A stretch of DNA of 64,000 nt from Octopus sinensis (GCF_006345805.1 NW_021831287.1:1-64000), one strand, 5' to 3'. Counted from the first letter of the stretch, positions 1-57,376 are shown. Notes: generated by a model from the letters alone, not told the origin. A program made the numbers and translations.

Positions 1-2490
1 TTTTACAGCTCGTCTAAAATCTTTTTAATCTACTCTATTCTGGCGTTTTAAAATTTTCAGCAAGATTTGCGTAATTATAAAGATCCCTACTCAGTTCTCC
101 ACGTGTGTGATATCAATCGATCTCATTTTTTCAGGAGATCAGTTTGAAATATTTCTCGATAATATGCGCTTTTTACAGCTCGTCTAAAACCTTTTTATCT
201 ACTCTATTCTGGCGTTTTAAAATTTTCAGCAAGATTTGCGTAATTATAAAGATCCCTACTCAGTTCTCCACGTGTGTGATAATAATCGAGCTCATTTTTT
301 CGGGGGATCAGTTTGAAATATTTTGGATAATATGCGCTTTTTACAGCTCGTCTAAAACCTTTTTATCTACTCTATTCTGGCGTTTTAAAATTTTTAGCAA
401 GATTTGCGTAATTATAAAGATCCCTACTCAGTTCTCCACGTGTGTGATATCAATCGAGCTCATTTTTTCAGGGGGTCAGTTTGAAATATTTTAGGATAAT
501 ATGCGCTTTTTACAGCTCGTCGAAAACCTTTTTATCTACTCTATTCTGGCGTTTTAAAATTTTCAGCAAGATTTGCGTAATTATAAAGATCCCTACTCAG
601 TTCTCCACGTGTGTGATATCAATCGATCTCATTTTTTCAGGGGATCAGTTTGAAATATTTCTCGATAATATGCGCTTTTTACAGCTCGTCTAAAACCTTT
701 TTATCTACTCTATTCTGGCGTTTTAAAATTTTCAGCAAGATTTGCGTAATTATAAAGATCCCTACTCAGTTCTCCACGTGTGTGATATCAATCGATCTCA
801 TTTTTTCAGGATCAGTTTGAAATATTCTCGATAATATGCGCTTTTTACAGCTCGTCTAAAACCTTTTTATTTATTCTATTCTGGCGTTTTAAAATTTTCA
901 GCAAGATTTGCCTAATTATAAAGATCCCTACTCAGTTCTCCACGTGTGTGATAACAATCGAGCTCATTTTTTCGGGGGATCAGTTTGAAATATTTTAGGA
1001 TAATATGCGCTTTTTACAGCTCGTCTAAAACCTTTTTATCTACTCTATTCTGGCGTTTTAAAATTTTTAGCAAGATTTGCGTAATTATAAAGATCCCTAC
1101 TCAGTTCTCCACGTGTGTGATATCAATCGAGCTCATTTTTTCAGGGGATCAGTTTGAAATATTTCTGGATAATATGCGCGTTTTACAGCTCGTCTAAAAC
1201 CTTTTTATCTACTCTATTCTGGCGTTTTAAAATTTTCAGCAAGATTTGCGTAATTATAAAGATCCCTACTCAGTTCTCCACGTGTGTGATAACAATCGAG
1301 CTCATTTTTTCGGGGGATCAGTTTGAAATATTTTAGGATAATATGCGCTTTTTACAGCTCGTCGAAAACCTTTTTATCTACTCTATTCTGGCGTTTTAAA
1401 ATTTTTAGCAAGATTTGCGTAATTATAAAGATCCCTACTCAGTTCTCCACGTGTGTGATATCAATCGAGCTCATTTTTTCAGGGGGTCAGTTTGAAATAT
1501 TTTAGGATAATATGCGCTTTTTACAGCTCGTCGAAAACCTTTTTATCTACTCTATTCTGGCGTTTTAAAATTTTCAGCAAGATTTGCGTAATTATAAAGA
1601 TCCCTACTCAGTTCTCCACGTGTGTGATATCAATCGAGCTCATTTTTTCGGGGGATCAGTTTGAAATATTTTAGGATAATATGCGCTTTTTACAGCTCGT
1701 CGAAAACCTTTTTATCTACTCTATTCTGGCGTTTTAAAATTTTTAGCAAGATTTGCGTAATTATAAAGATCCCTACTCAGTTCTCCACGTGTGTGATATC
1801 AATCGAGCTCATTTTTTCAGGGGATCAGTTTGAAATATTTTAGGATAATATGCGCTTTTACAGCTCGTCTAAAACCTTTTTATCTACTCTATTCTGGCGT
1901 TTTAAAATTTTCAGCAAGATTTGCGTAATTATAAAGATCCCTACTCAGTTCTCCACGTGTGTGATATCAATCGATCTCATTTTTTCAGGGGATCAGTTTG
2001 AAATATTTCTCGATAATATGCGCTTTTTACAGCTCGTCTAAAACCTTTTTATCTACTCTATTCTGGCGTTTTAAAATTTTCAGCAAGATTTGCGTAATTA
2101 TAAAGATCCCTACTCAGTTCTCCACGTGTGTGATATCAATCGATCTCATTTTTTCAGGGGATCAGTTTGAAATATTTCTCGATAATATGCGCTTTTTACA
2201 GCTCGTCTAAAACCTTTTATTTATTCTATTCTGGCGTTTTAAAATTTTCAGCAAGATTTGCCTAATTATAAAGATCCCTACTCAGTTCTCCACGTGTGTG
2301 ATAACAATCGAGCTCATTTTTTCGGGGGATCAGTTTGAAATATTTTAGGATAATATGCGCTTTTTACAGCTCGTCGAAAACCTTTTTATCTACTCTATTC
2401 TGGCGTTTTAAAATTTTTAGCAAGATTTGCGTAATTATAAAGATCCCTACTCAGTTCTCCACCTGTGTGATATCAATCTATCTCATTTTT
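1..2490. repeat. Tandem satellite array, 167-169 bp monomer, about 14.7 copies in window (probably continues left of the window)
   Basis: TTGAAATATT recurs at 144, 313, 481, 650, 817, 985, 1154, 1323, 1492, 1661, 1830, 1998, 2167, 2335. One monomer counted by hand is about 34% GC. The repeated ORFs in the track are artefacts of the repeat. Confidence 0.98.
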
Positions 2491-4593
2491 CACACACCAA
2501 TGGGGATACCGGGAATCGCCTCTTGAATGCTTGTACTAACTTGTGCAATTTATTCCTAAGCGGCAAAATTTCTGACCATGCTAGAATTCTGTTCTTTGCC
2601 GCGAATCTTACGGCCTTGGGCAAGAAAGATGGCGGTATCAGGCCTATTGCTGTTGGAAATTTCTTTCGTCGTTTATTTGCGAAAGACTGTTGCAAGTCCG
2701 TTATTCCTTCTATTGGCGAGCAACTGCAGCCCATTCAGTTGGGTGTGGGTGTTTTTGGTGGCTGCGAGTCTTCTGTCCATGTTTGTCGTTGTTTTATTCA
2801 CGCTTCTACTTGTTCCAATCTTCCCCTTGCCTTATTGAAACTGGATGTAACTAATGCTTTCAATTCTCTGGACCGTGGTCATATGTTGGAGGTCTGTCAA
2901 GACCGAGTTCCACACTTGCCTTCCTTTATATCGCTTTCGTACTCGGTTCCATCACTTTTAATCGCCGGTGGTTCTTTCATTTCTTCGTCCTGTGGCGTCC
3001 AACAGGGTGATCCTTTGGGCCCATTACTGTTCGCTCTTGCCGTGGATGCCATTGCCCGCGTTAATGAATCGCCCCTTAATCTTTGGTATCTCGACGATTG
3101 CACCCTGGGCGGTCCGCCTGATGTTTTGCTAAAGGACTTAGCCAGTCTAATTCCGGCTTTATCCGACATTGGTCTGGTTATTAATTCCAGCAAGTCCGAG
3201 ATTGTCAATCTCTCTGTTGAGCCATCCCTGTTTAAGAACTCCTTCTCTCTTTTTTGCAAACTCCTTCCTGAGTTGAGACAGACACCTCTGTCTGATCTGG
3301 AAATTCTGGGGTCACCGATTCTCGCCGACTCAGCTACACGAATCCTTCTTGCCAAAAAAATCTTATTGCATCTCTTTGTGAAAAACTTTCTGTCATTGAT
3401 CCTCATCCTTCATTCTACATCCTCAAGAACTATCTTTTGATCCCAAAAATTGTTTATATCTTGAGGAGCTCACCTTGTTTTTATGCCACCCAAATGCTGG
3501 AATCTGATGATTCCTTGGTTCAGGTCTGCGGAGAAAATTCTCAATGTGCATTTCGATGATATTGCCTGGTGTCAGGCTAAACTTCCTATGAGTCACGCGG
3601 ATCTGGGCCTCCGTTTTAGTATGGATTTGGCTCTTCCTGCCTTTCTTTCTTCGGCGTCTGGATCGTACAAAAGATTCTTCTTGTCCAAAAGATTCTGGAA
3701 AAAACTACTGAATCATCGTTGGACTCTGATATTGATTCGGCCCTCGCTTTTTGGGAACGCAATTTCTCTGAAGTCCCTTCCGATGTCTTTTCTCAGCGAG
3801 ACTGTGACAAAATTCTTTGCTGTCGATCTTCAACTGACTTGGAACCACTCCTCGACCAACACAGACTGGCTTGTTTCCGTTCCACCTGTCAGCCATACTC
3901 AGGCTCCTGGCTGAATGTACTCCCTTCTCCGCTTTTGGATACTGTCCTCGATAGGGATTCACTCCGTCTGGGTATCTGTAATCGCCTTGGACTCCCTGTC
4001 TGCAGACCTCACCCATGTCGTTGTGGGGATAAAGTTGACGCCTTTGGGCTACATCCTCTTTCTTGTCGAATGAGCGCCGGCAAAACGTCCAGACGGCTGT
4101 ACGCTGTTCGCTTTTGAATCCGGGAAACAGCTCGTTTGGGACATCACCTGTTCTGACTCTTTCGCCAAGGGTGCCTTAAATGCTACGGCTTGTCGACCCG
4201 GTTCGTCGGCCGAGAAGGCCGAATTTGTAAAACTAACGAAATATGAGGATTTACTCGATCGATTTTGCTTTTGGGCAATTGCCGTCGAAACTTCCTGTGT
4301 TTTTGGGGCCAAGACGCTTGCTCATCTCAAGAAACTTGGCCGCCTGTGCACCTACCGCTCCAGAGATCCGAGGGAATTTATATTCCTTAATCAGAGGATC
4401 TCGCTGGCTGTTTTACGCGGGAATTGTCTTTCAATCCTGCGAGCCAGTTCATAATAGCTAAATTTTTTTGACGATTTCTCTTATTCAAAAAAAATTAAAT
4501 TAATTAGCTTAGCTATCTTTTTACTTTTTTTAATAATTATTTTTGTACAAAAAAAACATATTCGGTCCAAGCTAACAATCATTTTACAAACAT
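2491..4593 (+). mobile_element. CRE-clade non-LTR retrotransposon (RT + CCHC + RLE endonuclease), 5'-truncated and frameshifted
   Basis: RT motifs KKDGGIRPIAVG, QLGVGV.GGCE, KLDVTNAFNSLDR, GVQQGDPLGPLLF, WYLDDCTL. C-terminal RLGL...CRCG...HPLSC, then KRPDG..L.WDITC...QRISLAVLRGN ending TAA 4452-4454. The A/T-rich 3' UTR resembles that at 41400-41500. Internal deletion near 4080. Confidence 0.92.
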
Positions 4594-15449: not shown

Positions 15450-16887
15450 ATGGGCAACTAAAGAAGCACGACTATTCCTCCGAAGTGACCGAAACAATAC
15501 AAAACTCGAGAAAACTTCTTCAAGTACAAAATTATACCCAACAAACAGAGCCAATTCCCCTTAGCTGTGTCCAACCTCTTGGAACTTGAGAAAAAGTCGA
15601 GAATGGCCAACGACTCCGAATCGACAGCCCGTATATTAGTAGAAATAGCCTCACTCCACCAAATAAGAGGGGAGTGGGCCGGACTGTGTGACATAATCCC
15701 CCTTCTGTGTCGAAAGAGAGCCCAATTCAAACAAGCACAGCACGCCCTGATAAAGCAAGTGTTTGAATATGTGAAGGACACCCCCAACACAGCCACACAA
15801 GTCAGACTAATCGAGACTCTCCTCCAAGTGAGTGAAGGAAAGGTCGAGTGATCCCCACTTTGGCAGATCTTTGCAGAAGTGGAGAGGGCGAGGCTGACGA
15901 TGATGCTGTGTAAAATAAGGCAGGAGAAGGGGGACGTGGAGGGGGCCTACGACCTGATGATTCCCGTCCAAGTGGAGACATTCACTTCCCTCGACCAACA
16001 CGAAATGACTCTCTTCATCCTCGAGCAGATGCAGCTCTGTCTTAGCCTCTCCAAGTACGACAGGGCGGCCATCATCGGCAGGAAAATAGTCCCCTCCAAT
16101 CTCGAACCAGTTTATTCTTCCTTTTTGACAGACCAGGATTGGCGGTCGTTGTTTTACACATATATGATTTCGATTGAAAAGCACGTCTGTAACTACCTCG
16201 AGGTGGCCAAATACTACTTGGCTATTCTGGAGGCGATTCCTCAGTTGGAGTGGAGAAAGGTCTCCGCTGTGGTTTATTGGGCAGACTCTGGCCAATGCAG
16301 TGAATTATGCAATATTGGCCCCACATTGTCCCCAACAAGTCGAGGTGCTCCATCAAATCAACTCAATCAGAAGACTTGACTTGCTTGTTGAACACAAGTT
16401 TGTTTGGATTGTCAGTTTGTGAGGAATATTCTTCAAGTTTTTATTGAGGCTGAGATTGTCGGCTCAGAACAGTTTTTTGCCAGGTTTTCAGACCTGTTCT
16501 GGAAGGATCCTCTGTCCTCGGGTACGTTTGGGTGCGGGGACGTGGAGTTGGAGCAGTTGAGGATTCGGATAATCGAGCATGTTGGTGTCTGTGTGAGTAT
16601 TAGAGAACATGTGGGTGATCGCCAAGTCGTATGGCTGCATTACCATATCTCGGGCTGCCCAGTTGTTGCAGTTGTCGGAGGACGAGACTGAGAAGCATTT
16701 GTCCAAGTTTGTGGTCGATGGGAGAACATGGGCGAGGATTGACCGGATTAAGAGAATCGTCAATTTTAGAAAAGTGGAGAAGTACGAGGAGACGTTGGAC
16801 AGATTGTCAGCCACCACTGAACGTCTTATGATGAATGTGTCCAAAGTTGTTCATCTCATTAACAAGGAGGCGCTCAAAGCTCTCTGA
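15450..16887 (+). CDS. PSMD12: 26S proteasome lid subunit RPN5; start codon one base out of frame as assembled
   Basis: LLELEKKSR, EGK|IFAEVERARLT, QVETF, FILEQMQLCL, IIEH|NMWVIAKSY and ARIDR match PSMD12. Six micro-introns at conserved positions. Confidence 0.92.
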
Positions 16888-18560: not shown

Positions 18561-20791
18561 ATGTCCCGAGTGCGCACACTTTACGACGTGTTGGTGGTGG
18601 GAGGAGGACATGCCGGATGTGAGGCAGCCCACGCAGCCCACCGAATGGGTCTCTCCACATCCTTAGTGACGGACAACATCAAATCAATAGGCAACAACTA
18701 ATAGTTCTACCCCCAGGAGAAATGTCCTGCAATCCCTCTTTCGGTGGAATCGGGAAGGGCCATCTTATGAGAGAAATCGACGCCCTCGATGGACTGTGTC
18801 CCAAGCTTTGTGGTCTAAACTTTACTTATTTGAACAGATAAGGCAGGAATTCACTTCCGTGTTTTAAACAAGAGTCACGGACCGGCTGTGTGGGTTTGTC
18901 CAACCAGTCTACTGCAGGGACTCAGAGCACAAATCTGCCGAGCCAAATACAGAACATTAATGCAGGCAGAATTACTGTGCAATTCCCACAATCTCGACAT
19001 TATTGAGACTAAAGTGGAAAACTTGTGCATAGAGGAGGGACAGTCAGGCCTCAAATGCACTGGAGTGGTCACTGGTGAGATATTCACTACTTTTATCCAG
19101 AATGTGGACTGATTCGTGCTAAAACTGTTATTTTGGCCACGGGAACGTTTTTGGGTGGGCAAATAAATATCGGAAAGGAGTCCTTTCCAGCGGGAAGACT
19201 CAATGAATCTCCCTCCAATGGTCTCTCTAATTGCCTTGAAAAATATTTTTCAATTACTCGACTGAAGACTGGTTTGATTGTTCCTGCCTAATTAAAGGGA
19301 CTCCCCCGAGAATTAGAAGGTCGACCATCAACTTATCACTCACCCAGCCTTCTCTCCCAGACATGCCTCCACTTCCTTTCTCTGTTATGAACAACAAAGT
19401 ATTAATTCCGGTTTATTGGGGTTTATTTGATGGCTAGTCTGAGGGACAATTGTACTGCTATAAGACAGAAACGAACTGTAGAGTTGCTCAGGTAGTCCGG
19501 GACAGTCTCCATCTTAATAACCATGTGAGAGAAGAAGTGGTGGGACCTCGATACTGCCCTTCGATAGAAGTATTGCCTCTTGATTTTGCTAGTCGAAAAT
19601 ATTGCGTTTTGGTGAGAGACGACACCCAGTCTGGCTCGAACCCGAAGGCTTTGAGTCTGATTTGATATATCCTCAGGGTCTGTCCTGTACGATGCCTCAG
19701 GAATATCAGCAAAAGCTTATTAATTGCATTCCGGGTCTTGAAAATGCAAAAATAACAGTTCCAGGTTGCCATCGTTAAATATTTGCCTTTTATTATACAC
19801 TTAATAATTTAAAGGATATGGAGTAGAATACGATTTTGTGGACCCACGTCAATTAAAATTAACTTTGGAAACAAAGGCAATCGCGAATTTATATTTTGGA
19901 GGTCAAATAAACGGGACAACAGGGTACGAAGAGGCAGCAGCCCAGGTTGTGTTGAAAAGTAATTGAAGGGAATTGTGGCAGGAATAAATGCAGGGTGTCG
20001 TGTGTTGGGACATCAGGAATATATAATAAGTCGATCGATGGGGTACATTGGAGTACTCATTGACGACATTGTGTGTCGTGGAGTGACCGAGCCTTACAGA
20101 ATGTTCACCAGCAGGGCAGAATATCGAATCACCCTTCGGCCTGACAACGCTGCAGAGAGACTCACACTGGGTAGCCCAATGGCAATATTTCAGACAATCA
20201 GACTGGCTGTGTCTCCCAGGAAAGAATGGCCGCTGCCCGGGAATTTCGGGATCGGTTGGAGGGGGCGGTGGAACTGCTTTCGAGGATTGTCCTTCCTCCA
20301 CATCACTTGGCAAATCCTTCCAGAAAGCATTTAAAGTAGTCAATTTAGACCAATTCAAGTGCATTGAAGTGTCTATCTCAGGATAATGTGGATGTTACTA
20401 ATTTGATTCCCGTCCTCCCTCAGATTAGGGAGTATGTCGAGAAGAATGGGGAATACGACTGCCACATGATGCTCAGACTCAAATGCGAGGGTTATTGAGG
20501 CAGGTCATCTGCTAGGACTGTACAGACATGCGGTTATGATTCAGAGTGAGGAGATGAATTATTTCCAAAAGCAATCAGAAATCAAAATCCCTCACAATTT
20601 TGATATTGACAGGTTTTGTTATTTGTCATTTTCAGTCTGTGTGTCTCTTATGAGATTAGAGAGAAGGTTCGACAGTATCGGCCGAGGACTGTAGTCTTCC
20701 AAGTGATGTGTAGGTAGGGCAAGCCAGTAGAATCGAAGGAATGACTCCCGCAGCCTTGATGATTATTTTATATGCAATTGAACGTAATTAA
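18561..20791 (+). CDS. MTO1: Mitochondrial tRNA modification enzyme MTO1 (MnmG/GidA family), 14 introns
   Basis: [53 protein letters not shown] and [16 protein letters not shown] at 20789-20791. Confidence 0.96.
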
Positions 20792-21411: not shown

Positions 21412-22344
21412 ATCTAAAGAGTTAAATTACTTCTTGTCCTTACTCTTGCCAACGAAATCAACATTTTAGTCAATTTTGGAACAAGACTCCAAACGTGGCC
21501 AAACCATTTTGTATAATATTTGATCAATGTTCAGCTTTGAGCAAGTGTCACGGGAAGGTTATTCTTGGTCTAGAGTGGATCACTTATACTGGATGTATAT
21601 TAAAATATTTTGATACATTAAACATCTAATATGGATATCGACGCGTTTTCACGTATAGGCAGATAAAAACATTTTGGAACCTAATTCTAACATTACAATC
21701 TGTCTCCCGAAATCAGAAAATATTCCTAAATAAAAAGCTTATCTTATTAACTGACAAAAATATGAAAATGAATGCACCTCAAAATTATAAAAGACAAATA
21801 ATCACGGAGGAAGTATATAATGTGTTAGTTTAGTAACAGTAGACTGCAACCTCTCTGCTTTCATTAAGCAATGTTCAATGAAAAATGGAATGTGAATAAT
21901 AAATATTCTAAGACACCAATTAACTAACCCAATTATTCGTGTGCCCCAGAAAATGTGCATTTTTACCAATGGGTCTCAACCCACAATGTACACTTAAATA
22001 TTCTCATATAAGGATTACGAATTTCAATTCTCCGATAAGTATAATATTAACTGGCAAAAGTTTGGAAACAAATGCGAATTCAGGAAGCGGAGCAAGACTA
22101 AGATCCGAGAATCCATATGGTGGGTTAGTTCACTCACAATAGATTGCAAACTCTGTCGCTATCCAGCATCAAGAAATATGCTGTGCAGCCAGTATTGCCG
22201 AAAATAAATTAATGTTCTGTATGAAACACAGAAACCCCTGATTTATTTCTATGCAAAAACCAATGGAAGGATTCAACAGCATCAACGTTGGAATCATTTA
22301 AACAATCAAAGAGAATTGCATCCAATGGTTTTTTCATTATTTAC

Positions 22345-22575
22345 TCAATTAAAGAGGCTTGTGAAGCACTAGCCAACGCTACCCGCCAATTGTCGTTTTC
22401 CAAGCCAAAGAATGTTCCCTTCCTTTTCAAACTTGATATTAAGAATGCTTTCAATAGCGTCAGGAGGGGCCACATGCTCGAGGCAGTGTCCCAACGCTGT
22501 CCCGAGTTATTTCCAATAGTTTCTCTTGCATATTCCATTCCAAGCAACTTGCTGTTTTCCGGGAAAGTCATTAGG
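22345..22575 (+). mobile_element. CRE-clade RT fragment
   Basis: ACEALANATRQ and FKLDIKNAFNSVRRGHMLEAV. Confidence 0.8.
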
Positions 22576-25569: not shown

Positions 25570-26539
25570 TTTTTTTTTTTTTTTTTTTTAGGTCTTTTTA
25601 TTTTTTTTTTAATTAAGTAAATTTATGATGTTAATTCTTTGATTGAGAGGACGCGCGAATAGATAGGCAGTTTCCGCGCAATATCGCGAGCGAAATGCGC
25701 TGAAAAAGCCAACTAGACTCACGTTTCTCGTGACTCTTCCTTGAGATCATCAAGCCGATTTCCGAAAGGAACTCAAGAGCTTTTGGGCCGATTATCCCGC
25801 TCGTTTCGAAAGCCAGGGGGACGAAAAGGCAGGTGTTCTCCAATGAGGCATACTTTGTTATTTTTTTTGTTTCGGCATGTGCGGAGGCTGAGCCAGGTCG
25901 GGAGGCAGAGTCCATGAGAGATGACGAGGAAAACGAGTCGACACAGGTCACGTCCCAAACGAGAGCGAGTCCCCCCTTGAACGGGAATAGCGTGGACCCG
26001 TCGCCACGGTCTAAACCAACCGGCTCTAGGACCGAAGGGAATCCAGCGGCGTTGAGCGCGCGCTTGACAATATCATTCAAGGCGGCATGTCTGGGTATAC
26101 GGCCGGTACTGAGGCGACAAGAGAGGGGGTGTAGCCCTCTCCTGTCAATGACCTTTCCGCATCTGCACTGATGTGGCAGGCAAATCTCTATGCCAAGCCG
26201 TAAACAGATTCCGATGCGGACAGATTCGTCGTCCAGCAACATTCCAGCAGAGGAAATCGGCAAAGCGTCAAGCCAATCGGCCGAGTGGGGTTGACAGGCA
26301 CAATTGATGCTTGCCAACTGAAACTGGTCAGCACGTAGGCGGATATCTTCGAGTGTATGCACACAATGTATCTCATCCCAGTTCTTTTGAACTGAGGGGA
26401 CGTCCGGGATTTTAAGCCCACGAGAAATCCACATGTTGACACCCGCCGCATATTCCAACAACTCGGGCTGTTCAGGGTATACGGCCGGTACTGAGGCGAC
26501 AAGAGAGGGGGTGTAGCCCTCTCCTGTCAATGACCTTTT
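25570..26539 (-). mobile_element. CRE-clade 3' portion with intact RLE ORF, poly(A) tail and 11-bp TSD
   Basis: ORF 25631-26530 (ICLRLG..CRCG..HPLSC..RHAALND..WDVTC..FETSG..QRISLAILRGN). Poly(A) tail about 25568-25588. CCTTAAAAGTT at 25559-25569 and 26540-26550. Confidence 0.93.
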
Positions 26540-32597: not shown

Positions 32598-34214
<1,617 letters not shown>

Positions 34215-38509: not shown

Positions 38510-38805
38510 TGGTCGACTTGATTGTGCGATTTTTTGGCTTATAAGTTCATTGCATTCGCGTCAAATTCCGCAAGATTGTGATTGGTCTGTATATCTTATC
38601 TATTTAATGTTAAATATGCCTAATCATATTGCACGATACACACTTGCTACATTTCTGAACAATAATTTGATTGGGTATATTTTGTCTGTAGAACTTCATT
38701 TCATGAATTTTTGACTATCCAGACAAAATATTCACCAAAATAATTTAAGAATGTCCAAAAATCGATATATAGACATTCTTAAGAAATGGTTCAATCATAT
38801 ATTCA

Positions 38806-40376
38806 AACGTAAATATTAAAAAGTAGAGGGCTCAAGACCGAGTCTTGAGGTACCCCTCTTTTGCGATCGACAAATTCCGACAAACTGTTTCCGCATCGTA
38901 TGTATGACCTCCTCATGGATAGATAGCTCTTCAGCCAATCGACTGTTCTAGACCCGGGTTTTATTCTGGCGACACTTCCCAAGAGGCCCAGGTGCCATAC
39001 GCTGTCAAAAGCTTTTGAGACATCGAGGCAGATAGAAATAGTCGCTATATTGTTTGCAAGACTAAGCGTGATGACTTTCTCGAATTCTCCGAAACAATCT
39101 CCGTAGGATCTTCTTCGTCGGGATCCCCACTGCTCTGATTCCTCTACGAAGTTCGAAAGCCTTGTGAAGACAATCCGTTCCATAATTTTAGAGACGGAGT
39201 ATATTAGGCTTATTGGTCGATAGTTCTCTGTATGGTCCTTCATTTTCCAGGCTTTGGAATCATACGTACGATTGACTTTTTCCAAGAGTCCGGTACGTAT
39301 CCAAATCTCCAGCTTGCATTGTATAGTGCGGTCAAGTATCGTAGGAGAATAATTGGAGCATGTTTGAATACAGTAATTGGAATGTAGTCATGGCCGGGTG
39401 CATTGTTCTTGCAGCTCATAATTGCGGCATACGTTTCTTCCAACGTTATGTCTCTGCACAGTGGTATAACTCAAATTAGCTTGCCTCACTCTCTGTGCCT
39501 CACATATAAATTCTTTCGGATTATGTCAATCGGATCCACCTCTTGAACTTTTGCCAGTTGTTTTCGCAAATGTGAGGGAACTTCATCGAGCGGGATAGCT
39601 ATTCCTTCAGTTGTTTTGGAATATTAATCGACTGAAAACCATTGATTTTGTGATGCTGCTTTCCCTTTAGCTTCGTTTCATTCACAACAATATGTCCATG
39701 TTTATCAATCTAACCAAGTAGGTTAGCTCCGTAGCCCGTTTCCGAATTGACCGGGCGTTGATAGCGTAAAAACGCTCATCTCGTCAAGTTTTGGTGACTG
39801 TCCTCCATAACGAGCTCCACCAGTTCCAGTAAATTTTTAAACGTTTTTTTAGTCGTCGTTTTCGATTTAAGATGGAGATCCTCTAGTTCTGCTTTTAAAT
39901 GTTCAATTGCACTTGTCTTTTCGTCTGCCACCAGTATGTTGCATGGTGATTTTCCCGGGATTGACTTAGAAGTGTCCCCGAGTTTCATAGATGTCATTCT
40001 TTTTTGGGTTGAATCATAGATTCGGTTGTGTTTACGCCTTGTTCCAACTTTAATTTTGGTTTTTGCGTAGATATAGTGGGTGTCGCAGTTTTCAAAGTGT
40101 TTGACATGGATTCATAGATATCGTCAGTCTGAACTTCAGCGTCCACGAATTTTGTACTTTTACTAAAATTCCATCCCTTCCAGGTATTTTGTAGTTTAAC
40201 TTTTCCTGTTTTTATCTTTTCGTCTTGTATTTTCATTGCGGAAGACGTATTAAATTTCAGTTTACTAGACTGATCTGTAGTTTTTCGAGGTAATCTCTTT
40301 TAAGAAGCTCCTTGACAACAGGAAATCCACCGTAGTTGACCATGTGTGCTGAGGATCCACAGTTTATGCATATTAA
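38806..40376 (-). mobile_element. LINE 5' segment (ORF1-like region + RT up to motif NIYV), inverted relative to its 3' part
   Basis: APGHDYIP, WKKSIV.MIPKPGK, NYRPISL...SKIMER, CLDVSKAFDSVWH and GVPQDSVLSPLLFNIYV; coiled ORF1-like ORFs at 39776-40236. Confidence 0.85.
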
Positions 40377-52538: not shown

Positions 52539-53671
52539 ATGGCAACCAACAGTTGTTCTCGAGTATACGCCGACGTGCTTGATGACAAATTGGAGGAGTA
52601 CTGGGACTACGAGTCTCTCTACATAAACTACGGGTAGTGGTGGTAGACCAATGGCAGATCCCCCGACAAGTACAGAATAATCCGGAAGATTGGGAGAGGC
52701 AAGTACAGCGAGGTGTTTTACGGAGTGGACTCAGTCACTTCCAACAAAGTGGTCATCAAAGTGCTAAAAGTACTGTCTGATATCACCCAGCCCATTCGGT
52801 ACACCAAAATACAGCGAGAAGTGCACATTCTGCGAAACGTGGGCGACCACGAGAACATAATCAAGTTCAATGAGATAACCAATTCGAAAGAAGTAGTCCT
52901 CCCCCTCATTGAAGGGTCACCGTGCCCTCATCTTCGACTATGTCCCCCACGACGTCCGGGTTGGGTGTGTGTGCTGACTGTAGGCCTTCGAGAACCCTTC
53001 CCTCCCGGAAATCCGCATGTTTATGTTCCAACTCCTGAAGGTAGTGCTGTGGGGGAGTGCAGGCCTTGGATTACTGTCATTCGCGGGGGATCATGCACAG
53101 AGACGTCAAACCTCAGAACCTCATCTTCAACCGAGCACAGCAGAGACTGTATCTCCTGGACTTTGGACTGGCTGAATATTATCACAAATATCAGGAATAC
53201 AACGTCCGGGTGGCTTCCCGACACTACAAGGCCCCTGAATTGCTTGTCAATTACATGATGTATGACTACTCGGTCGATTTGTGGGCTACTGGGTCCTGGC
53301 TGGCCGCACTGCTTTTTAGAATAGACCCCTTCTTCAATGGAAAGGACAATGTCAATCAGGTTGGTTTGCTGGTAGCATTCAGCTTGTGCGAGTGGAGAGA
53401 GTGTTGGGATTTGCAGAATTACAGGCATACCTGTCCAAGTACAATATCGAGTTGGACAGAAAGATATCCGCCGCCATCACCAGAAAGTGTCAATTCTTGT
53501 CATTGTAGACACAACCGACGTCCCTGGATGGACTTTGTTACTGAGGCCAACTATGCGCTCTGTCAGCCTGATGCCATTGACCTGGTCGACTCACTTCTCA
53601 GATATGACCACTCCACTCGCCCCACTGCCCTCGAGGCACTGCAGCATCCTTTTTTTACTGGAATGTCCTAA
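52539..53671 (+). CDS. CSNK2A1: Casein kinase II alpha, divergent, 7 micro-introns
   Basis: SRVYADV....EYWDYE, GRGKYSEVF, CHSRGIMHRDVKPQN, EYNVRVASR, YDYSVDLW and FF.GKDN..QL. Introns at human CK2-alpha positions. Confidence 0.9.
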
Positions 53672-53759: not shown

Positions 53760-55028
53760 ATGCGTCGTACGTGTCTTCTTCCCAGACCATCGAAAGCTCT
53801 CGTGTTCAGTCTGGCCACGTCCAACGACTTTGGGCGCATATTCGTGGGGTCGAGGTCGGGGACTCTCACTCCACACCAAAAGTCAATTTCCCCCTCCATC
53901 GAAGGAATATCCCTAAACCCCTCCAACTCGCAATCCCTCGCCGCATGCGCACGGAAACTGGCCTCCCACAAAATAGACGTGCTGGTGCATGATATGTCTT
54001 CTGTCCTCCTCCACCAGTACATGAATTGTCGAATGAACAGCATATCCCTCAACGTCAACTGCCAATCCCTCCTTCTCAGGTTCCCATGTGAATTTATTAT
54101 CAGTGTCCGAGCATTCCTTCCTCTCCTGGCCAAGTCTAGTAATCCACACGTCGTCGTCCTGTGTGCTCCACTTAACCTCGACAGTCAGTGGACGACCCAT
54201 CATTTCAGTACTCCTCCCTTCCTAATGTCCAGATATGACTTTGGCCCACAATTTCAACTCCTATGCCACTCTTGCCCTCGCCGAAGAACTCAAAGACCAA
54301 GGAATAGCTGTAAACTCTCTGTGGAGTCGGAATTGTATGTCCTGCATTGATTGGCAGTGATTTGTGACCTCCCTCTGAACATTGCAGACAAGTCACTGCG
54401 GGACATGTGTGCCACGCCCAGTCTCATGGCTCGGGCCATCAATCACATCTCCAAGCAAAACTCGGGCGGGTTTACGGGGAATCACCTCATTGCGGAAGAC
54501 ATGTTGGGGGAGAAGAGCAGGGAAGGTTATTCCGTGGGTGTATTCTAGACTTATTCCCTGCCTTCTTGATGGGAGAATACAAGCACTCGCCCTACGCACT
54601 CGTTCGAGCCAGTCAAGTATAGAATTGTCCTAATCTAGACTGGGCCTATTAAAACGTTGGACGGACTGAATATATTCCAGTCCATGTTGCAGAAATATGT
54701 AAAAAACGTGCCCTTGTCAGACCTCCCCTCCTCTTCATTCAATATTGTCATCAGGACGTGCAGTCTCGATGACTGGATATTCAAATGTGAGGGCAGGACA
54801 TGCAATCTTGTCAACACAGTCGACTGTTCTCAAGTGTACATCCTCTCCCTTCCCCAACAACTCCTCCTGAGTGTCCTGTCTTCTAATCTACACCCCAAAT
54901 ATCTCAGCTTCAGTTCTGGGTTCTTCTTTAAAGGATCTGTGTCTGCCTGGAAGATGTTCGAGGGTGTTTTGTTGATGGCTCAACAACACGTGATCGACAA
55001 TTTGAGTACTAATTCGTCGACTGTCTGA
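53760..55028 (+). CDS. HSDL2: HSDL2-like protein (degenerate SDR domain + SCP2-like domain)
   Basis: FLPLLAKS.NPHV..L..PLNL..QW, LAEEL...IAVNSLW, FTGN.LI.ED, LFPAFL.GEY and SCP2-like L.P....SG..FKG. Five introns of 22-25 nt join the ORFs. Confidence 0.72.
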
Positions 55029-55108: not shown

Positions 55109-55908
55109 TCAATTGTTAAATGGATTGTGATAATAAGGATACTCTCGATAGTACTCATTTGGGTAGTACCCATTATACATGTAGTGAGGAATCGACACCC
55201 TCGGGTTGACACTAGATTATATGTCACCACTCATACTAATTGACCTGCTGATAGGGCAAATACGTGTCAGGCATTTGTGCAGGGGGTATTTGTGACCTGT
55301 CGATACTAAACTTGATAGCCCATGAGTCACCTTATTGCTTCCTGATTTGTTTCGTCTGAGTAAATACCCGATTTTCTGTTTTCCAATAAATTTCTTTTCT
55401 CATTTTTTTTGATTCTCTGCCGCTTGTTTTTGAACCAATTCTTGATTTGTTCGTCTGTAAGACACGTGTTTTGTGCCAGCAGTTTCTTTTCTTCGTGGGA
55501 AGGGTTGGGGGTGGTGGAAAAAAAATCTTCCAAAATTTTTTTAGCAGAAAGCGGCATGTTATATTTGTATTTGTCTTTTCCGTCCGAAATTGTCAGAGGA
55601 GGAGGATTTTTCTTTTTAAAACGATGCCATTCGACTTTTTTATAGTCCATCCGGGCCAGTTTTCTCATTTGACGCTGAGAGTCTATCCAGATGAGATTGA
55701 GGGCGTGCCAATCTGAGCGATAAAAACGGTTGTTTTCCAAATATGACTGCACTAGCCTGTATTCCCCTCTCATCATATATTCCGTGGCGCGTTCAACCGG
55801 ATTTTGCTCCATTTGCTTTTGTGGACCACTTTCCTCCAGTCGTTCCTCTTGTGGTGAAGTAGTTGACTTTTGAATACAGCGTTTCTGGTGTTTTCCTGCC
55901 TTTTTCAT
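55109..55908 (-). CDS. Divergent SIX-class homeobox gene A (partial SIX domain + K50 homeodomain)
   Basis: RGEY.....LENNRF...W..., PPP.TI.DG and NWFKNKRQR match SIX proteins. Two 25-nt introns after the homeodomain lead to a Tyr/Pro-rich tail ending TGA 55109. Start codon tentative. Confidence 0.82.
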
Positions 55909-56180
55909 TGTGCATGGCCGCAGACTCTTTTTTCGGATTATATACCTTGTAATAGAACACCTCGTTCCGTTAGCAGCCAACGTTATGACAGGCAAGTCTA
56001 AACACCATAGCTGACAAAATAGCTTCCTTTCGAAGAGATTATTAAAAGTATTGAGGATTTCGTGAATGTGGGTGGTTGAGCTGATTCGAGTATGTGATAC
56101 TGATTAATGGGTCATTCGCCAATGAAAAACAATCACATTAAAAAATATATGTAAAATTAGTAGCACGTAAAGGATTAGTA

Positions 56181-57376
56181 CTAACGTGGAGGGTGATAGG
56201 GAAATTGTTGATTACCCTGTCCGTAATAGTCTCTGTAGTATGAATCTTGATTGTAGTCATATCTATCATATTGCGGTCTGAACTCACTGAATCTGGGGTC
56301 GCGACTACATTATGATCCAATATTCAAACCGATAAACTGGTTGACGGAAGGGGTACCTCTCATGATTTTCCGCTGGTAGTACTTCCATTTGTCGTTTTCG
56401 TATGAATGTACTAACTTGAGGACGATTCCCAAACGTATTTGTGGTGGGTGGCTGTATGTCCGATTCACTGGGGATTGTGTTATTCAATAAAGGGTACCTC
56501 TCCGGATTTTCCGCTGGTAGTACTTCCATTTGTCGTTTTCGTATGAATGTACTAACTTGAGGATAATTCCCAAACGTATTTGTGATGGGTGGCTGTATGT
56601 CCGATTCACTGGGGATTGTGTTATTCAATAAAGGGTACCGCTCCTGATTCTCCGCTGGTGGTACTTTCTTTTTTCGTTTTCGTATGAATGTACTAACTTG
56701 AGGACGATTCCCAAACGTATTTGTGGTGGGTGGCTGTGTGTCCGTTTCACTGGAGATTGTGTTATTCAAAAAAGGGTACCGCTCCTGATTTTCCGCTGGT
56801 GGTGCTTTCCTTTTTCGTATGAATGTACTAACTTGAGGACAATTCCCAAACGTATTTGTGGTTGGTGGCTGTGTGTCCGATTCACTGGGGATTGTGTTAT
56901 TCAATTAACCTCCTCGATGCTCTTTCTTTGTTTCTCTTTCTGTGGTTTTTAAACCAATTAGTGACTTTCTTGGATGAAAGATGGGTCATTTCGACAAGCA
57001 CTTCTATTTCTTGGGGAGAGGGTTTTGGATTATTGGAAAAAAATTCTTCCAAAATCACTCTCGAGGATTGGAGGACTCCATAAATGTATTTGTCTCCCGG
57101 ATCAAGTATTGATGGAGGGGGAGGATTCTTGTCTTTGAAACGGTGCCACTCCACACATTTATAGTCGAGTCCAGCCAATTTTCTGAGTTGTCTCTGCGAG
57201 TCTTCCCAAATGGTATAAAGGTCGTGCCAATATATCCGATCGAATGAATTATCCCTCAAATATTGCTGCACTTGTGTGTATTCCCCTCTTTGTATAAATC
57301 CTCGAGCCACTTCAACCGGATTACGCGTATCTTTCTTCTGCGGTGGACTTTTCTTTTTTCGTTGATTTCTATTCAT
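56181..57376 (-). CDS. Divergent SIX-class homeobox gene B with repeat-expanded C-terminus
   Basis: Paralog of gene A (NPVE.A...RGEY, WHRFK.KNPPP, NWFKNHRKR). Introns at 56885-56909 and before the Tyr-rich last exon ending TAG 56181. Confidence 0.82.
56340..56904 (-). repeat. Coding tandem repeat, 4 units of 135-141 bp, inside SIX gene B
   Basis: CTGG(G/A)GATTGTGTTATTCAA starts at 56468, 56609, 56750 and 56885; peptide unit SESD.QPP.TNTFGN.PQVSTFIRKR...PAEN.ERYP.LNNTI. Confidence 0.95.

What the first reader, a model, noticed from the sequence alone, without database searches (positions are those of the whole stretch)
56340..56909. Possible intron birth: tandem duplication across a splice acceptor creates new 30-nt GT-AG units in SIX gene B
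Seen: the duplicated unit is the 3' 20 nt of the ancestral 25-nt intron (56885-56909, ...TTGAATAACACAATCCCCAG) plus the following exon, which ends in GAG (A/C)G|GTACCC. At each of the three junctions (56750-56779, 56609-56638, 56468-56497) an exonic GTAC becomes fused to a copied acceptor, giving a 30-nt GT...AG segment in the same phase as the parent intron. The last GTACCC copy is coding (RYPFRQ, aligning to TYLPYQQ in paralog A), so the donor was originally exonic. GTAC donors are used by real introns here (CK2, HSDL2, PSMD12, DUS2). The new segments are 3n and stop-free, so spliced and unspliced forms both stay in frame, a low-cost route to new introns. Established: intron gain by tandem duplication of cryptic splice signals is a proposed but rarely observed mechanism. 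Inference: micro-intron genomes make it easy because about 20 nt carry the whole acceptor.
Basis: partly seen in the sequence, partly recalled or inferred. Interest (0 to 1): 0.8.

Follow-up and report, generated by a model that had tools for sequence, protein, structure and literature searches.

The report
Tandem repeat copying a micro-intron's acceptor
A homeobox gene in a tiny-intron animal genome has amplified a 141-base piece that begins inside a 25-base intron, leaving three intron-like 30-base segments that might be newborn introns, but no RNA evidence was available and the mechanism is already documented in potato.

Summary
On the minus strand, a divergent SIX/SINE-class homeobox gene (57376-56181) carries a 141-nt tandem array of 4.0 copies, 91% matching. 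The unit starts inside the gene's 25-nt first intron and ends in exon 2 at ...GGTACCC. Each of the three internal junctions is therefore a 30-nt GT...AG segment: six exonic bases (GTACCC) plus a copy of 24 of the intron's 25 bases. All three are multiples of three, stop-free and in phase 2, like the parent intron. The tandem paralog A is single-copy and collinear with a one-unit version of B, so the array is a B-specific expansion.

Whether the segments are spliced cannot be decided here. No transcript or ortholog was reachable. Among 27 homology-verified introns in this window, the segments pass the weak local signals (GT[A/T], [C/T]AG, A-rich 3' part). A verified 29-nt intron with a GTAC donor also exists. 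However, 30 nt lies outside the 21-27 nt core. Exonic GT...AG decoys outnumber real introns about 5:1, and the reading frame does not need the splice.

The same mechanism, with transcript proof, was published for a potato RdRp gene (PMC4974935). This is a plausible, cheaply testable new example of a known kind.

The parts
56910..57376 (-). Exon 1 of homeobox gene B, from the ATG at 57376. It encodes the SIX-domain-like region and the homeodomain.
   Evidence: ORF. Pfam Homeodomain, E 6.6e-12. 42% identity to paralog A, whose only PDB hit at E<=1e-9 is SIX1 4EGC, E 2e-13.
56885..56909 (-). Parent intron 1: 25 nt, GTTAATTGAATAACACAATCCCCAG, phase 2.
   Evidence: It is needed for the frame. The exon 1 frame hits TAA 12 nt into the intron, and the downstream frame is closed by TAA just upstream.
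56330..56884 (-). Exon 2 as read without splicing of the junction segments: 555 nt, containing the array.
   Evidence: Gene model translates without stops to 381 aa.
56770..56904 (-). Repeat unit 1: 135 nt, with a 6-nt in-frame deletion. Its first 20 nt are the 3' end of the real intron.
   Evidence: Alignment A1. Unit comparison.
56629..56769 (-). Repeat unit 2: 141 nt.
   Evidence: 94% identical to unit 1.
56488..56628 (-). Repeat unit 3: 141 nt.
   Evidence: 95% identical to unit 4.
56347..56487 (-). Repeat unit 4: 141 nt. It runs into the unique exon sequence ...RYPFRQPVYR.
   Evidence: Collinear with paralog A.
56750..56779 (-). Junction segment 1: 30-nt GT...AG candidate proto-intron, GTACCCTTTTTTGAATAACACAATCTCCAG.
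   Evidence: Composition score at the 52nd percentile of verified introns and the 90th of exonic decoys.
56609..56638 (-). Junction segment 2: 30-nt GT...AG candidate proto-intron, GTACCCTTTATTGAATAACACAATCCCCAG.
   Evidence: 19th percentile of verified introns and 67th of decoys.
56468..56497 (-). Junction segment 3: identical in sequence to segment 2.
56305..56329 (-). Intron 2 of gene B: 25 nt, GTTTGAATATTGGATCATAATGTAG, phase 2.
   Evidence: Needed for the frame. It sits at the position homologous to intron 2 of paralog A, with flanks VY(R)|RDPRFS against VN(Y)|VNPRVS.
56181..56304 (-). Exon 3 of gene B: Tyr-rich C-terminal tail and the stop codon.
   Evidence: Similar Tyr-rich tail in paralog A.
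55109..55908 (-). Paralog A: single-copy reference for the ancestral state. Its introns are 55330-55306 and 55236-55212, both 25 nt and phase 2.
   Evidence: 750-nt CDS, open. Pfam Homeodomain 2.1e-13 and SIX1_SD 5.2e-4. PDB SIX1 2e-13.

Best explanation
Shown. Gene B is a divergent SIX/SINE-class homeobox gene lying in tandem with its paralog A. It underwent a lineage-specific amplification, from one to four copies, of a 141-bp segment. The segment begins at about the second base of the gene's 25-nt first intron and ends inside exon 2 at ...GGTACCC. Each of the three internal junctions carries a copy of about 24 of the 25 intron bases, including the A-rich TAAC region and the CAG acceptor, directly behind an exonic GTACCC. 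The unit is 47 codons and stop-free. The array therefore reads through as one 555-nt exon 2 encoding four 45-47 aa repeats (S/T/P-rich with an RKRK cluster) between the homeodomain and a Tyr-rich tail. In this reading the intron-derived bases are exonized as ..LNNTIPS...

Inferred. The 30-nt GT...AG segments are splice-competent-looking proto-introns. Their removal is optional for the reading frame. I consider it most likely that they are retained, or removed in only part of the transcripts, so that they are at most alternative micro-introns. I think constitutive new introns less likely. I put the chance of detectable splicing at one or more junctions at about 0.45-0.5, and the chance of efficient constitutive splicing at about 0.3.
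For: - Array and coordinates.
- Gene model with two 25-nt introns that the frame requires.
- The ancestral state was one unit. B with a single unit (242 aa) is collinear end to end with A (249 aa), 42% identical over 224 aa with 5 gaps. A has no repeat.
- The units are diverged (91-95% identity, one 6-nt indel), so the array is real and not brand new.
- Nothing forces splicing. The segments are 3n and stop-free.
- GT...AG alone means little. There are 146 exonic decoys of 20-31 nt in 4522 nt of verified exon against 27 real introns. 14 decoys are exactly 30 nt, and 17 fit GTW...YAG.
- Length: 25 of 27 verified introns are 21-27 nt, and only two are longer (29 and 50 nt).
- Features that keep splicing plausible:
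  - +3 is A or T in 22 of 27 real introns, against 33% of decoys.
  - -3 is C or T in 21 of 27, against 34% of decoys. The segments have +3 A and -3 C.
  - A is enriched at -7 to -9 in real introns, and the segments have A at -8 and -9.
  - A TNAY motif places the A 18 nt from the donor, which is typical of verified introns.
  - A homology-verified 29-nt intron with a GTAC donor and an AATAACA stretch exists in DUS2.
  - Three 3n stop-free introns are inferred by homology.
- Literature: the dicyemid 5' splice site is reduced to GTa and the 3' splice site to AG (PMC13644364). About one third of predicted Dicyema sp. introns are 30 bp or longer (PMC6543705).
Against: - No RNA evidence of any kind, so the retained-versus-spliced call is a judgement and not a result.
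- The copied 24 nt contain every 3' signal the functional parent intron has. The parent itself scores worse on intron-like composition (11th percentile) than the new segments do (19th-52nd). Efficient splicing would therefore not be surprising.
- pN/pS among the units is about 1 (0.5-1.6). Simulation gives a 34% chance that all four units stay open under neutral substitution. There is thus no positive evidence that the repeat peptide, including the exonized part, is under protein-level constraint.
- The homology of intron 1 between A and B is not exact in the BLAST alignment, which places the positions about 19 codons apart in a poorly conserved stretch.
Confidence: 0.55

Rival explanations
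1. True intron birth. The three 30-nt segments are efficiently spliced micro-introns. Gene B then has five introns and encodes a 351-aa protein with four 35-37 aa repeats.
For: - The segments carry a copy of 24 of 25 nt of a working intron.
- The donor GTA and acceptor CAG fit the weak consensus of 27 verified introns.
- DUS2 has a verified 29-nt intron with a GTAC donor.
- 3n stop-free introns exist in this genome.
- The identical mechanism is proven with transcripts in potato RdRp (PMC4974935).
Against: - No transcript data.
- 30 nt is outside the 21-27 nt core that holds 25 of 27 verified introns.
- +4 C is rare, seen in 2 of 27.
- In the verified set, no real intron of 28-31 nt has the GTW...YAG form, while four exonic decoys do.
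- A GT within a few bases of a random exonic breakpoint is roughly a 40% coincidence (my own rough estimate, not a computed result).
Confidence: 0.3
2. Array skipping. The real donor at 56909 splices to a downstream acceptor copy (56750, 56609 or 56468), giving introns of 160, 301 or 442 nt. With the last copy this restores the ancestral one-unit mRNA, as in the classical Rogers model, and the array evolves as intron.
For: - The four acceptor copies are near-identical and in the same phase.
- pN/pS is about 1 among units.
- An open frame is only weakly informative: P = 0.34 under neutrality.
Against: - The proximal acceptor, 25 nt from the donor, is intact.
- 26 of 27 verified introns here are 29 nt or shorter, so introns of several hundred nt would be exceptional.
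- The 6-nt indel is in frame and no stop has arisen. The joint chance of this under neutrality is about 0.1.
Confidence: 0.07
3. Artefact or decay. The array is an assembly error, or gene B is a degenerating pseudogene whose repeat has no transcript-level meaning.
For: - Read-level data were not available.
- pN/pS is about 1 in the array.
- No homolog of gene B was retrievable.
Against: - The units differ by 5-9% and by an indel, unlike collapsed or expanded identical repeats.
- The full 381-aa frame is open across three exons.
- The homeodomain scores above the Pfam cut-off.
- Both flanking introns are intact.
Confidence: 0.05

Closest known systems
Potato RdRp intron gain by tandem duplication across an intron-exon boundary (Ma, Lan & Niu 2016, PeerJ, PMC4974935)
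   Same: The duplicate spans the 3' part of an intron plus the 5' part of the downstream exon. The new intron consists of a small, formerly exonic piece of the upstream copy, which supplies a cryptic donor, plus the intronic piece of the downstream copy. The branch site and 3' splice site are inherited from the parental intron.
   Different: - The potato case has transcript evidence and orthologs without the duplication. Here neither could be obtained.
- Here the intron is only 25 nt, so almost the whole intron (24 of 25 nt) was copied.
- The event was iterated to four copies.
- The candidate is in frame and stop-free.
[quoted passage not shown] 2011, as reviewed in PMC3443670 and PMC2891723
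   Same: An internal tandem duplication supplies the splice signals. When the unit is 3n, retention and splicing can coexist (PMC2891723).
   Different: In the classical model both sites come from a duplicated exonic AGGT, the intron has the size of the duplication, and the mRNA is unchanged. Here the candidate intron is 30 nt out of a 141-nt unit and the mRNA gains 105-111 nt per copy. This is 'imprecise' gain in the terms of PMC3443670.
Multiplication of a pre-existing intron by internal tandem duplication (Arabidopsis TOUCH3, Knowles & McLysaght 2006; Gao & Lynch 2009; both as cited in PMC4974935)
   Same: A pre-existing intron is carried along in an internal tandem duplication.
   Different: In those cases the entire intron, with both splice sites, is copied. 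Here the copy lacks the G of the GT, so the original donor is lost and a different exonic GT 6 nt upstream would have to serve.
Fission-yeast genes with tandem 24-bp AGGT repeats and an intron across several duplicates (Zhu & Niu 2013, as cited in PMC4974935)
   Same: Multiple short tandem units inside a coding exon generate repeated splice signals.
   Different: In the yeast genes the intron spans whole units. Here the candidate introns sit at the unit junctions.
Micro-introns of Dicyema and myxobolid Myxozoa (PMC13644364; PMC6543705)
   Same: The window's verified introns have a median of 24 nt, GT[A/T]...[C/T]AG ends and an A-rich zone upstream of the AG. This matches the reduced 'GTa' and 'AG' signals reported for these animals.
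   Different: The three junction segments are 30 nt, 3n and stop-free. Their splicing is unverified.

Membership tests
[quoted passage not shown] 2016) | A tandem duplication lies inside a gene. | tested here: met
   Array of period 141, 4.0 copies, 91% matches. Aligned units.
[quoted passage not shown] 2016) | The duplicated unit crosses an intron-exon boundary, so that the downstream copy supplies the branch region and 3' splice site. | tested here: met
   The last 20 nt of the parent intron are identical in the copies and similarity extends to 24 nt.
[quoted passage not shown] 2016) | A GT in the formerly exonic end of the upstream copy lies at an intron-like distance from the copied AG. 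| tested here: met
   GTACCC lies 30 nt upstream of each copied AG, and there is no other GT in between.
[quoted passage not shown] 2016) | Relatives lack the duplication, establishing polarity. | tested here: inconclusive
   The in-window paralog A is single-copy and collinear with one-unit B. Orthologs from other species or individuals could not be obtained.
[quoted passage not shown] 2016) | Transcripts are spliced at the new sites. | not testable with these tools
   No RNA data. The protein database and exact look-up returned nothing for this gene.
Spliceosomal micro-intron of this genome | GT...AG termini with +3 A/T and -3 C/T. | tested here: met
   The segments are GTA...CAG. In verified introns +3 is A/T in 22 of 27 and -3 is C/T in 21 of 27, against 33% and 34% in decoys.
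Spliceosomal micro-intron of this genome | Length lies within the genome's narrow intron-length range. | tested here: inconclusive
   The segments are 30 nt. 25 of 27 verified introns are 21-27 nt, with one of 29 and one of 50 nt. The literature reports about one third of predicted Dicyema sp. introns at 30 bp or longer.
Spliceosomal micro-intron of this genome | Intron-like interior composition: T-rich, 38% against 24% in exons. | tested here: inconclusive
   The composition score separates real introns from decoys with AUC 0.81. Junction 1 is at the 52nd percentile of real introns. Junctions 2 and 3 are at the 19th. The parent is at the 11th.
Spliceosomal micro-intron of this genome | Removal is required to keep the reading frame or homology. 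| tested here: not met
   The segments are 3n and stop-free, and both forms are in frame. No homolog exists to show whether the 10 codons are absent elsewhere.
SINE (SIX) class homeobox gene | A homeodomain is present. | tested here: met
   Pfam PF00046: B 6.6e-12 and A 2.1e-13, both above the cut-off.
SINE (SIX) class homeobox gene | A SIX domain lies N-terminal to the homeodomain. | tested here: inconclusive
   - Pfam SIX1_SD matches only A, at E 5.2e-4 and 20.9 bits, below the 27.4 cut-off.
- The only PDB hit for A at E<=1e-9 is SIX1 4EGC, over residues 42-171, covering the C-terminal part of the SIX domain plus the homeodomain.
- B is 42% identical to A over this region.
- Divergent dicyemid-specific SINE groups are described in PMC6543705.
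Tandem exon duplication (cassette or mutually exclusive exons) | Each copy carries its own acceptor and its own donor from the flanking introns. | tested here: not met
   The unit ends inside the exon at GGTACCC. The true donor of exon 2, at 56329, is not duplicated.

The most novel reading that the evidence does not exclude
The three junction segments are genuine, recently born micro-introns, or alternatively spliced ones that could give up to eight in-frame isoforms (2^3 combinations, by inference). It would also be a natural experiment showing that about 24 nt of a 25-nt intron is a portable acceptor module that can recruit any nearby exonic GT[A/T]. Its route, 3n and stop-free, would escape nonsense-mediated surveillance at birth.
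Probability: 0.4. Interest if true: 0.6.

Novelty: new member of a known kind. Interest (0 to 1): 0.4.

Why it matters
How 21-27-nt introns are recognised is an open question. Their 5' signal is little more than GT[A/T] and their 3' signal little more than [C/T]AG (PMC13644364). In this window, exonic GT...AG decoys outnumber real introns about 5:1.

This locus holds four copies of the same 3' intron module in one transcript. One copy sits behind the native donor at 25 nt, and three sit behind a different donor at 30 nt. A single RNA-seq alignment or RT-PCR would therefore show whether the 3' module plus any nearby GT is sufficient for splicing.

If the segments are spliced, this adds a clean and recent case of intron gain by boundary-crossing tandem duplication, in an animal. 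If they are not, it is an example of intron sequence exonized into a repeat-expanded linker of a transcription factor. Either way the mechanism itself is already known from potato.

Tried and rejected
1. Enumerating 'frame-rescuing' GT...AG candidates from ORF structure alone. GT...AG candidates showed no length peak over control dinucleotide pairs, so this was too noisy to use.
2. A self-trained coding-potential dynamic-programming gene finder. It recovered only 2 of the 7 CK2 introns that homology shows, so I rejected it as unreliable. I replaced it with a home-made protein-to-genome spliced aligner, applied to MTO1 with six homologs, and with hand or PDB-guided junctions for CK2 and DUS2.
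3. The aligner's 25-nt plus 16-nt solution at 18666-18719 was rejected after reading the DNA. A single 26-nt GC-AG intron at 18691-18716 restores VTDNIKSIG|[14 protein letters not shown].
4. Homolog search with the full gene B protein found nothing at E<=1e-3. Exact look-up of the exon 1 ORF found nothing on record. Exact-pattern scans of metagenome and genome contig collections gave 0 hits. No ortholog or transcript was therefore available.
5. Selection tests on the units gave pN/pS of about 1 and a 34% chance of frame preservation under neutrality. These have too little power to tell coding from non-coding, or intron from exon, for the 30-nt segments.
6. Supplementary intron-length tables of PMC13644364 are not held, and Gao & Lynch 2009 is not held.
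7. I considered and rejected the reverse polarity, in which the parent intron derives from an exonic repeat. Paralog A and one-unit B are collinear through both introns and the C-terminal tail, and exon 1's frame stops inside the intron. An intron at or near this place must therefore predate the array.

Full report
**The observation**

The feature lies on the minus strand. Tandem Repeats Finder reports one array at 56351-56905 with period 141, 4.0 copies, 91% matches and score 907.

- the 25-nt GTTAATTGAATAACACAATCCCCAG at 56909-56885;
- three 30-nt GTACCC...(C/T)CCAG segments at 56779-56750, 56638-56609 and 56497-56468.

A 30-mer across the acceptor occurs four times in the window, against none in 100 shuffles.

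Aligning the units (A1) shows that the last 20 nt of the 25-nt segment are identical in the copies. Similarity continues upstream, with TTTATTG in the copies against TTAATTG in the parent. The simplest reading is that 24 of the 25 bases were copied, everything but the G of GT, with one later A>T change. The unit ends at GGTACCC. After the last copy the sequence continues into unique exon (CTTCCGTCAACC...).

Units 1 and 2 are 94% identical and units 3 and 4 are 95% identical. The other pairs are 91-92% identical, and unit 1 has a 6-nt in-frame deletion. Such divergence argues against an assembly artefact.

**The gene**

The ORF of exon 1 (57376-56910) encodes a homeodomain (Pfam E 6.6e-12). Its frame runs into TAA 12 nt into the 25-nt segment. 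The downstream open frame is closed by TAA just upstream of TTGAAT. A 25-nt phase-2 GT-AG intron is therefore needed to join them.

A second 25-nt phase-2 intron (56329-56305) joins exon 2 to a Tyr-rich tail that ends at 56181. The full product is 381 aa, or 351 aa if the three 30-nt segments are removed.

Immediately downstream on the same strand lies paralog A (55908-55109), which also has two 25-nt phase-2 introns.
- A's only PDB match at E<=1e-9 is human SIX1 (4EGC, E 2e-13). The match covers the C-terminal half of the SIX domain plus the homeodomain.
- Pfam SIX1_SD is sub-threshold for A and absent for B.
- 'SIX/SINE-class-like' is therefore the fair label. Divergent dicyemid-specific SINE groups are described in PMC6543705.

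A version of B with a single unit (242 aa) aligns end to end with A (249 aa): 42% identity over 224 residues with 5 gaps, including RYPFRQPVYR|RDPRFS against TYLPYQQVNY|VNPRVS around intron 2. One unit is therefore the ancestral state and the array is a B-specific expansion.

In the BLAST alignment the first introns of A and B sit about 19 codons apart, within a poorly conserved stretch. Their strict positional homology is unresolved. An intron at or near this place must still predate the array.

**The source organism**

CK2-alpha, MTO1, DUS2 and other animal genes are present. MTO1's best hits are bilaterian and sponge MTO1 at about 60% identity, with no near-identical sequence in the database.

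Introns of this size are reported among animals only in myxobolid Myxozoa and Dicyema japonicum (PMC13644364). The SINE-class paralogs and LINE-like ORFs fit a dicyemid (PMC6736024, PMC6543705). This assignment is an inference.

**What real introns look like in this window**

I assembled 27 introns supported by homology:
- 7 in CK2-alpha, by alignment to human CK2-alpha';
- 14 in MTO1, using my own spliced aligner with six homologs that all agreed. One GC-AG intron was corrected by eye;
- 2 in DUS2, checked against human DUS2 structures;
- the 4 introns of SIX A and B.

Their properties are as follows.

| Property | Verified introns | Exonic decoys |
|---|---|---|
| Length | 21-27 nt in 25 of 27; one of 29, one of 50; median 24 | 20-31 nt by definition |
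| +3 is A or T | 22 of 27 | 33% |
| -3 is C or T | 21 of 27 | 34% |
| A at -7 | 54% | 36% |
| Interior T content | 38% | 24% (exon) |

The verified exons (4522 nt) contain 146 GT...AG pairs 20-31 nt apart. Fourteen of these are exactly 30 nt and 17 have the GTW...YAG form. A GT 30 nt upstream of an AG is thus ordinary in exons and is not evidence of an intron.

**How the junction segments compare**

Points in favour of splicing:
- The segments have +3 A and -3 C, A at -8 and -9, and a TAAC whose branch-type A lies 18 nt from the donor. That spacing is typical of the verified set.
- Their composition scores sit at the 52nd percentile (junction 1) and 19th percentile (junctions 2 and 3) of real introns. 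The parent intron sits at the 11th.
- A homology-verified DUS2 intron (32936-32964) is 29 nt long, has a GTAC donor and even shares an AATAACA stretch.
- CK2 has a GTAC-donor intron (52770-52790). PSMD12 (15524-15548) and HSDL2 (54208-54232) have frame-required candidates with GTAC donors.
- Three 3n stop-free introns are inferred by gap-free homology: CK2 21 nt, MTO1 24 nt and DUS2 27 nt. Being in frame and stop-free is therefore no bar.

Points against:
- 30 nt lies outside the 21-27 nt core.
- +4 C is rare, at 2 of 27.
- In the verified set, the 28-31 nt GTW...YAG class holds four decoys and no real intron.
- A GT within a few bases of a random exonic breakpoint is a moderately likely coincidence, by my own rough estimate.

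**Selection**

pN/pS among the units is about 1: 0.5-1.6 overall, and 0.6-2.6 when the junction codons are excluded. A simulation gives a 34% chance that all four units stay open under neutral substitution.

The repeat peptide therefore shows no detectable constraint. These data cannot separate 'coding' from 'spliced out' for the 30-nt segments.

**External evidence**

- The protein database returned nothing for gene B.
- An exact look-up of its exon 1 ORF found no contig.
- Pattern scans of the metagenome and prokaryote genome collections found nothing.

No transcript or ortholog could therefore be examined.

**Interpretation**

The structure and its origin are well supported. A tandem amplification crossed the 3' splice site of a micro-intron. 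Nearly the whole intron was exonized, or re-armed, three times.

Splicing status is open. I judge retention or partial (alternative) removal the most likely state, with confidence 0.55. Efficient new introns are a serious rival at 0.3. Use of distal acceptor copies to skip the array is a minor one at 0.07. Artefact or pseudogene is unlikely at 0.05.

**Comparison with what is known**

Tandem genomic duplication is among the best-supported routes of intron gain. A review counts 188 events plus the ATP2A1 in vivo demonstration (PMC3443670). Lehmann et al. already noted that 3n duplications allow retention and splicing to coexist (PMC2891723).

The exact variant proposed here is published with transcript evidence for a potato RdRp gene (PMC4974935). 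There too the duplicate crosses the intron-exon boundary, the branch region and acceptor are inherited from the parental intron, and the donor is recruited from the upstream exon.

Three things are particular to this locus:
- the micro-intron scale, so that 24 of 25 nt travel with the duplication. This places the case between 'propagation of an existing intron' and 'creation of a new one';
- the iteration to four copies;
- the in-frame, stop-free nature of the candidates.

**Verdict**

This is a new, unverified member of a known kind, with moderate interest. One RNA alignment would settle it and would also bear on how micro-introns are recognised.

Noticed in passing
window 1-2490: A 169-nt satellite array (14.8 copies, 96% matches; also scored as period 337) abuts a reverse-transcriptase-like ORF at 2427-3440 (+). 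It is the only other tandem array in the window.
   Followed up: no
window 18691-18716 (+): A 26-nt GC-AG micro-intron lies in MTO1 (GCAACAACTAATAGTTCTACCCCCAG). Only this junction restores VTDNIKSIG|[19 protein letters not shown]-only aligner had to invent a 25-nt plus a 16-nt intron instead.
   Followed up: partly
window 52770-52790, 18894-18917, 33009-33035 (+): Three micro-introns of 21, 24 and 27 nt (in CK2, MTO1 and DUS2) are multiples of three with no in-frame stop. They are recognisable only because homologs lack those residues and GT...AG sits exactly at the gap edges. Retaining such introns would be invisible to nonsense-mediated decay.
   Followed up: partly
verified exons of CK2, MTO1, DUS2, SIX A/B (4522 nt): Exonic GT...AG pairs 20-31 nt apart outnumber real introns about 5:1 (146 against 27). 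Even the GTW...YAG form is as common in exons (17) as in introns (17). The known signals therefore cannot by themselves explain intron recognition here.
   Followed up: partly
window 19765-19814 (+): A 50-nt intron in MTO1 is the one clear length outlier among 27 verified introns. All six homolog alignments agree on it.
   Followed up: no
window 55109-57376 (-): Two SIX/SINE-class homeobox paralogs lie head to tail, 42% identical, with about 270 nt between B's stop codon (56181) and A's ATG (55908). This is possibly the two-copy 'dicyemid SINE group 1' listed for D. japonicum in PMC6543705.
   Followed up: partly
window 22225-22575 (+), 25631-26530 (-), 38803-39285 (-) and others: Several long ORFs carry reverse-transcriptase-like motifs (for example FKLDIKNAFNSVRRGHMLEA) and look like LINE-type retroelement copies interspersed among the genes. 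They were seen in translations only.
   Followed up: no
window 32936-32964 (+) and 56885-56909 (-): The DUS2 29-nt intron and the SIX-B parent intron share an AATAACA stretch in their 3' halves. TNAY motifs occur in 21 of 27 verified introns, mostly with the A 16-18 nt from the donor. This may be the branch-site signal.
   Followed up: partly
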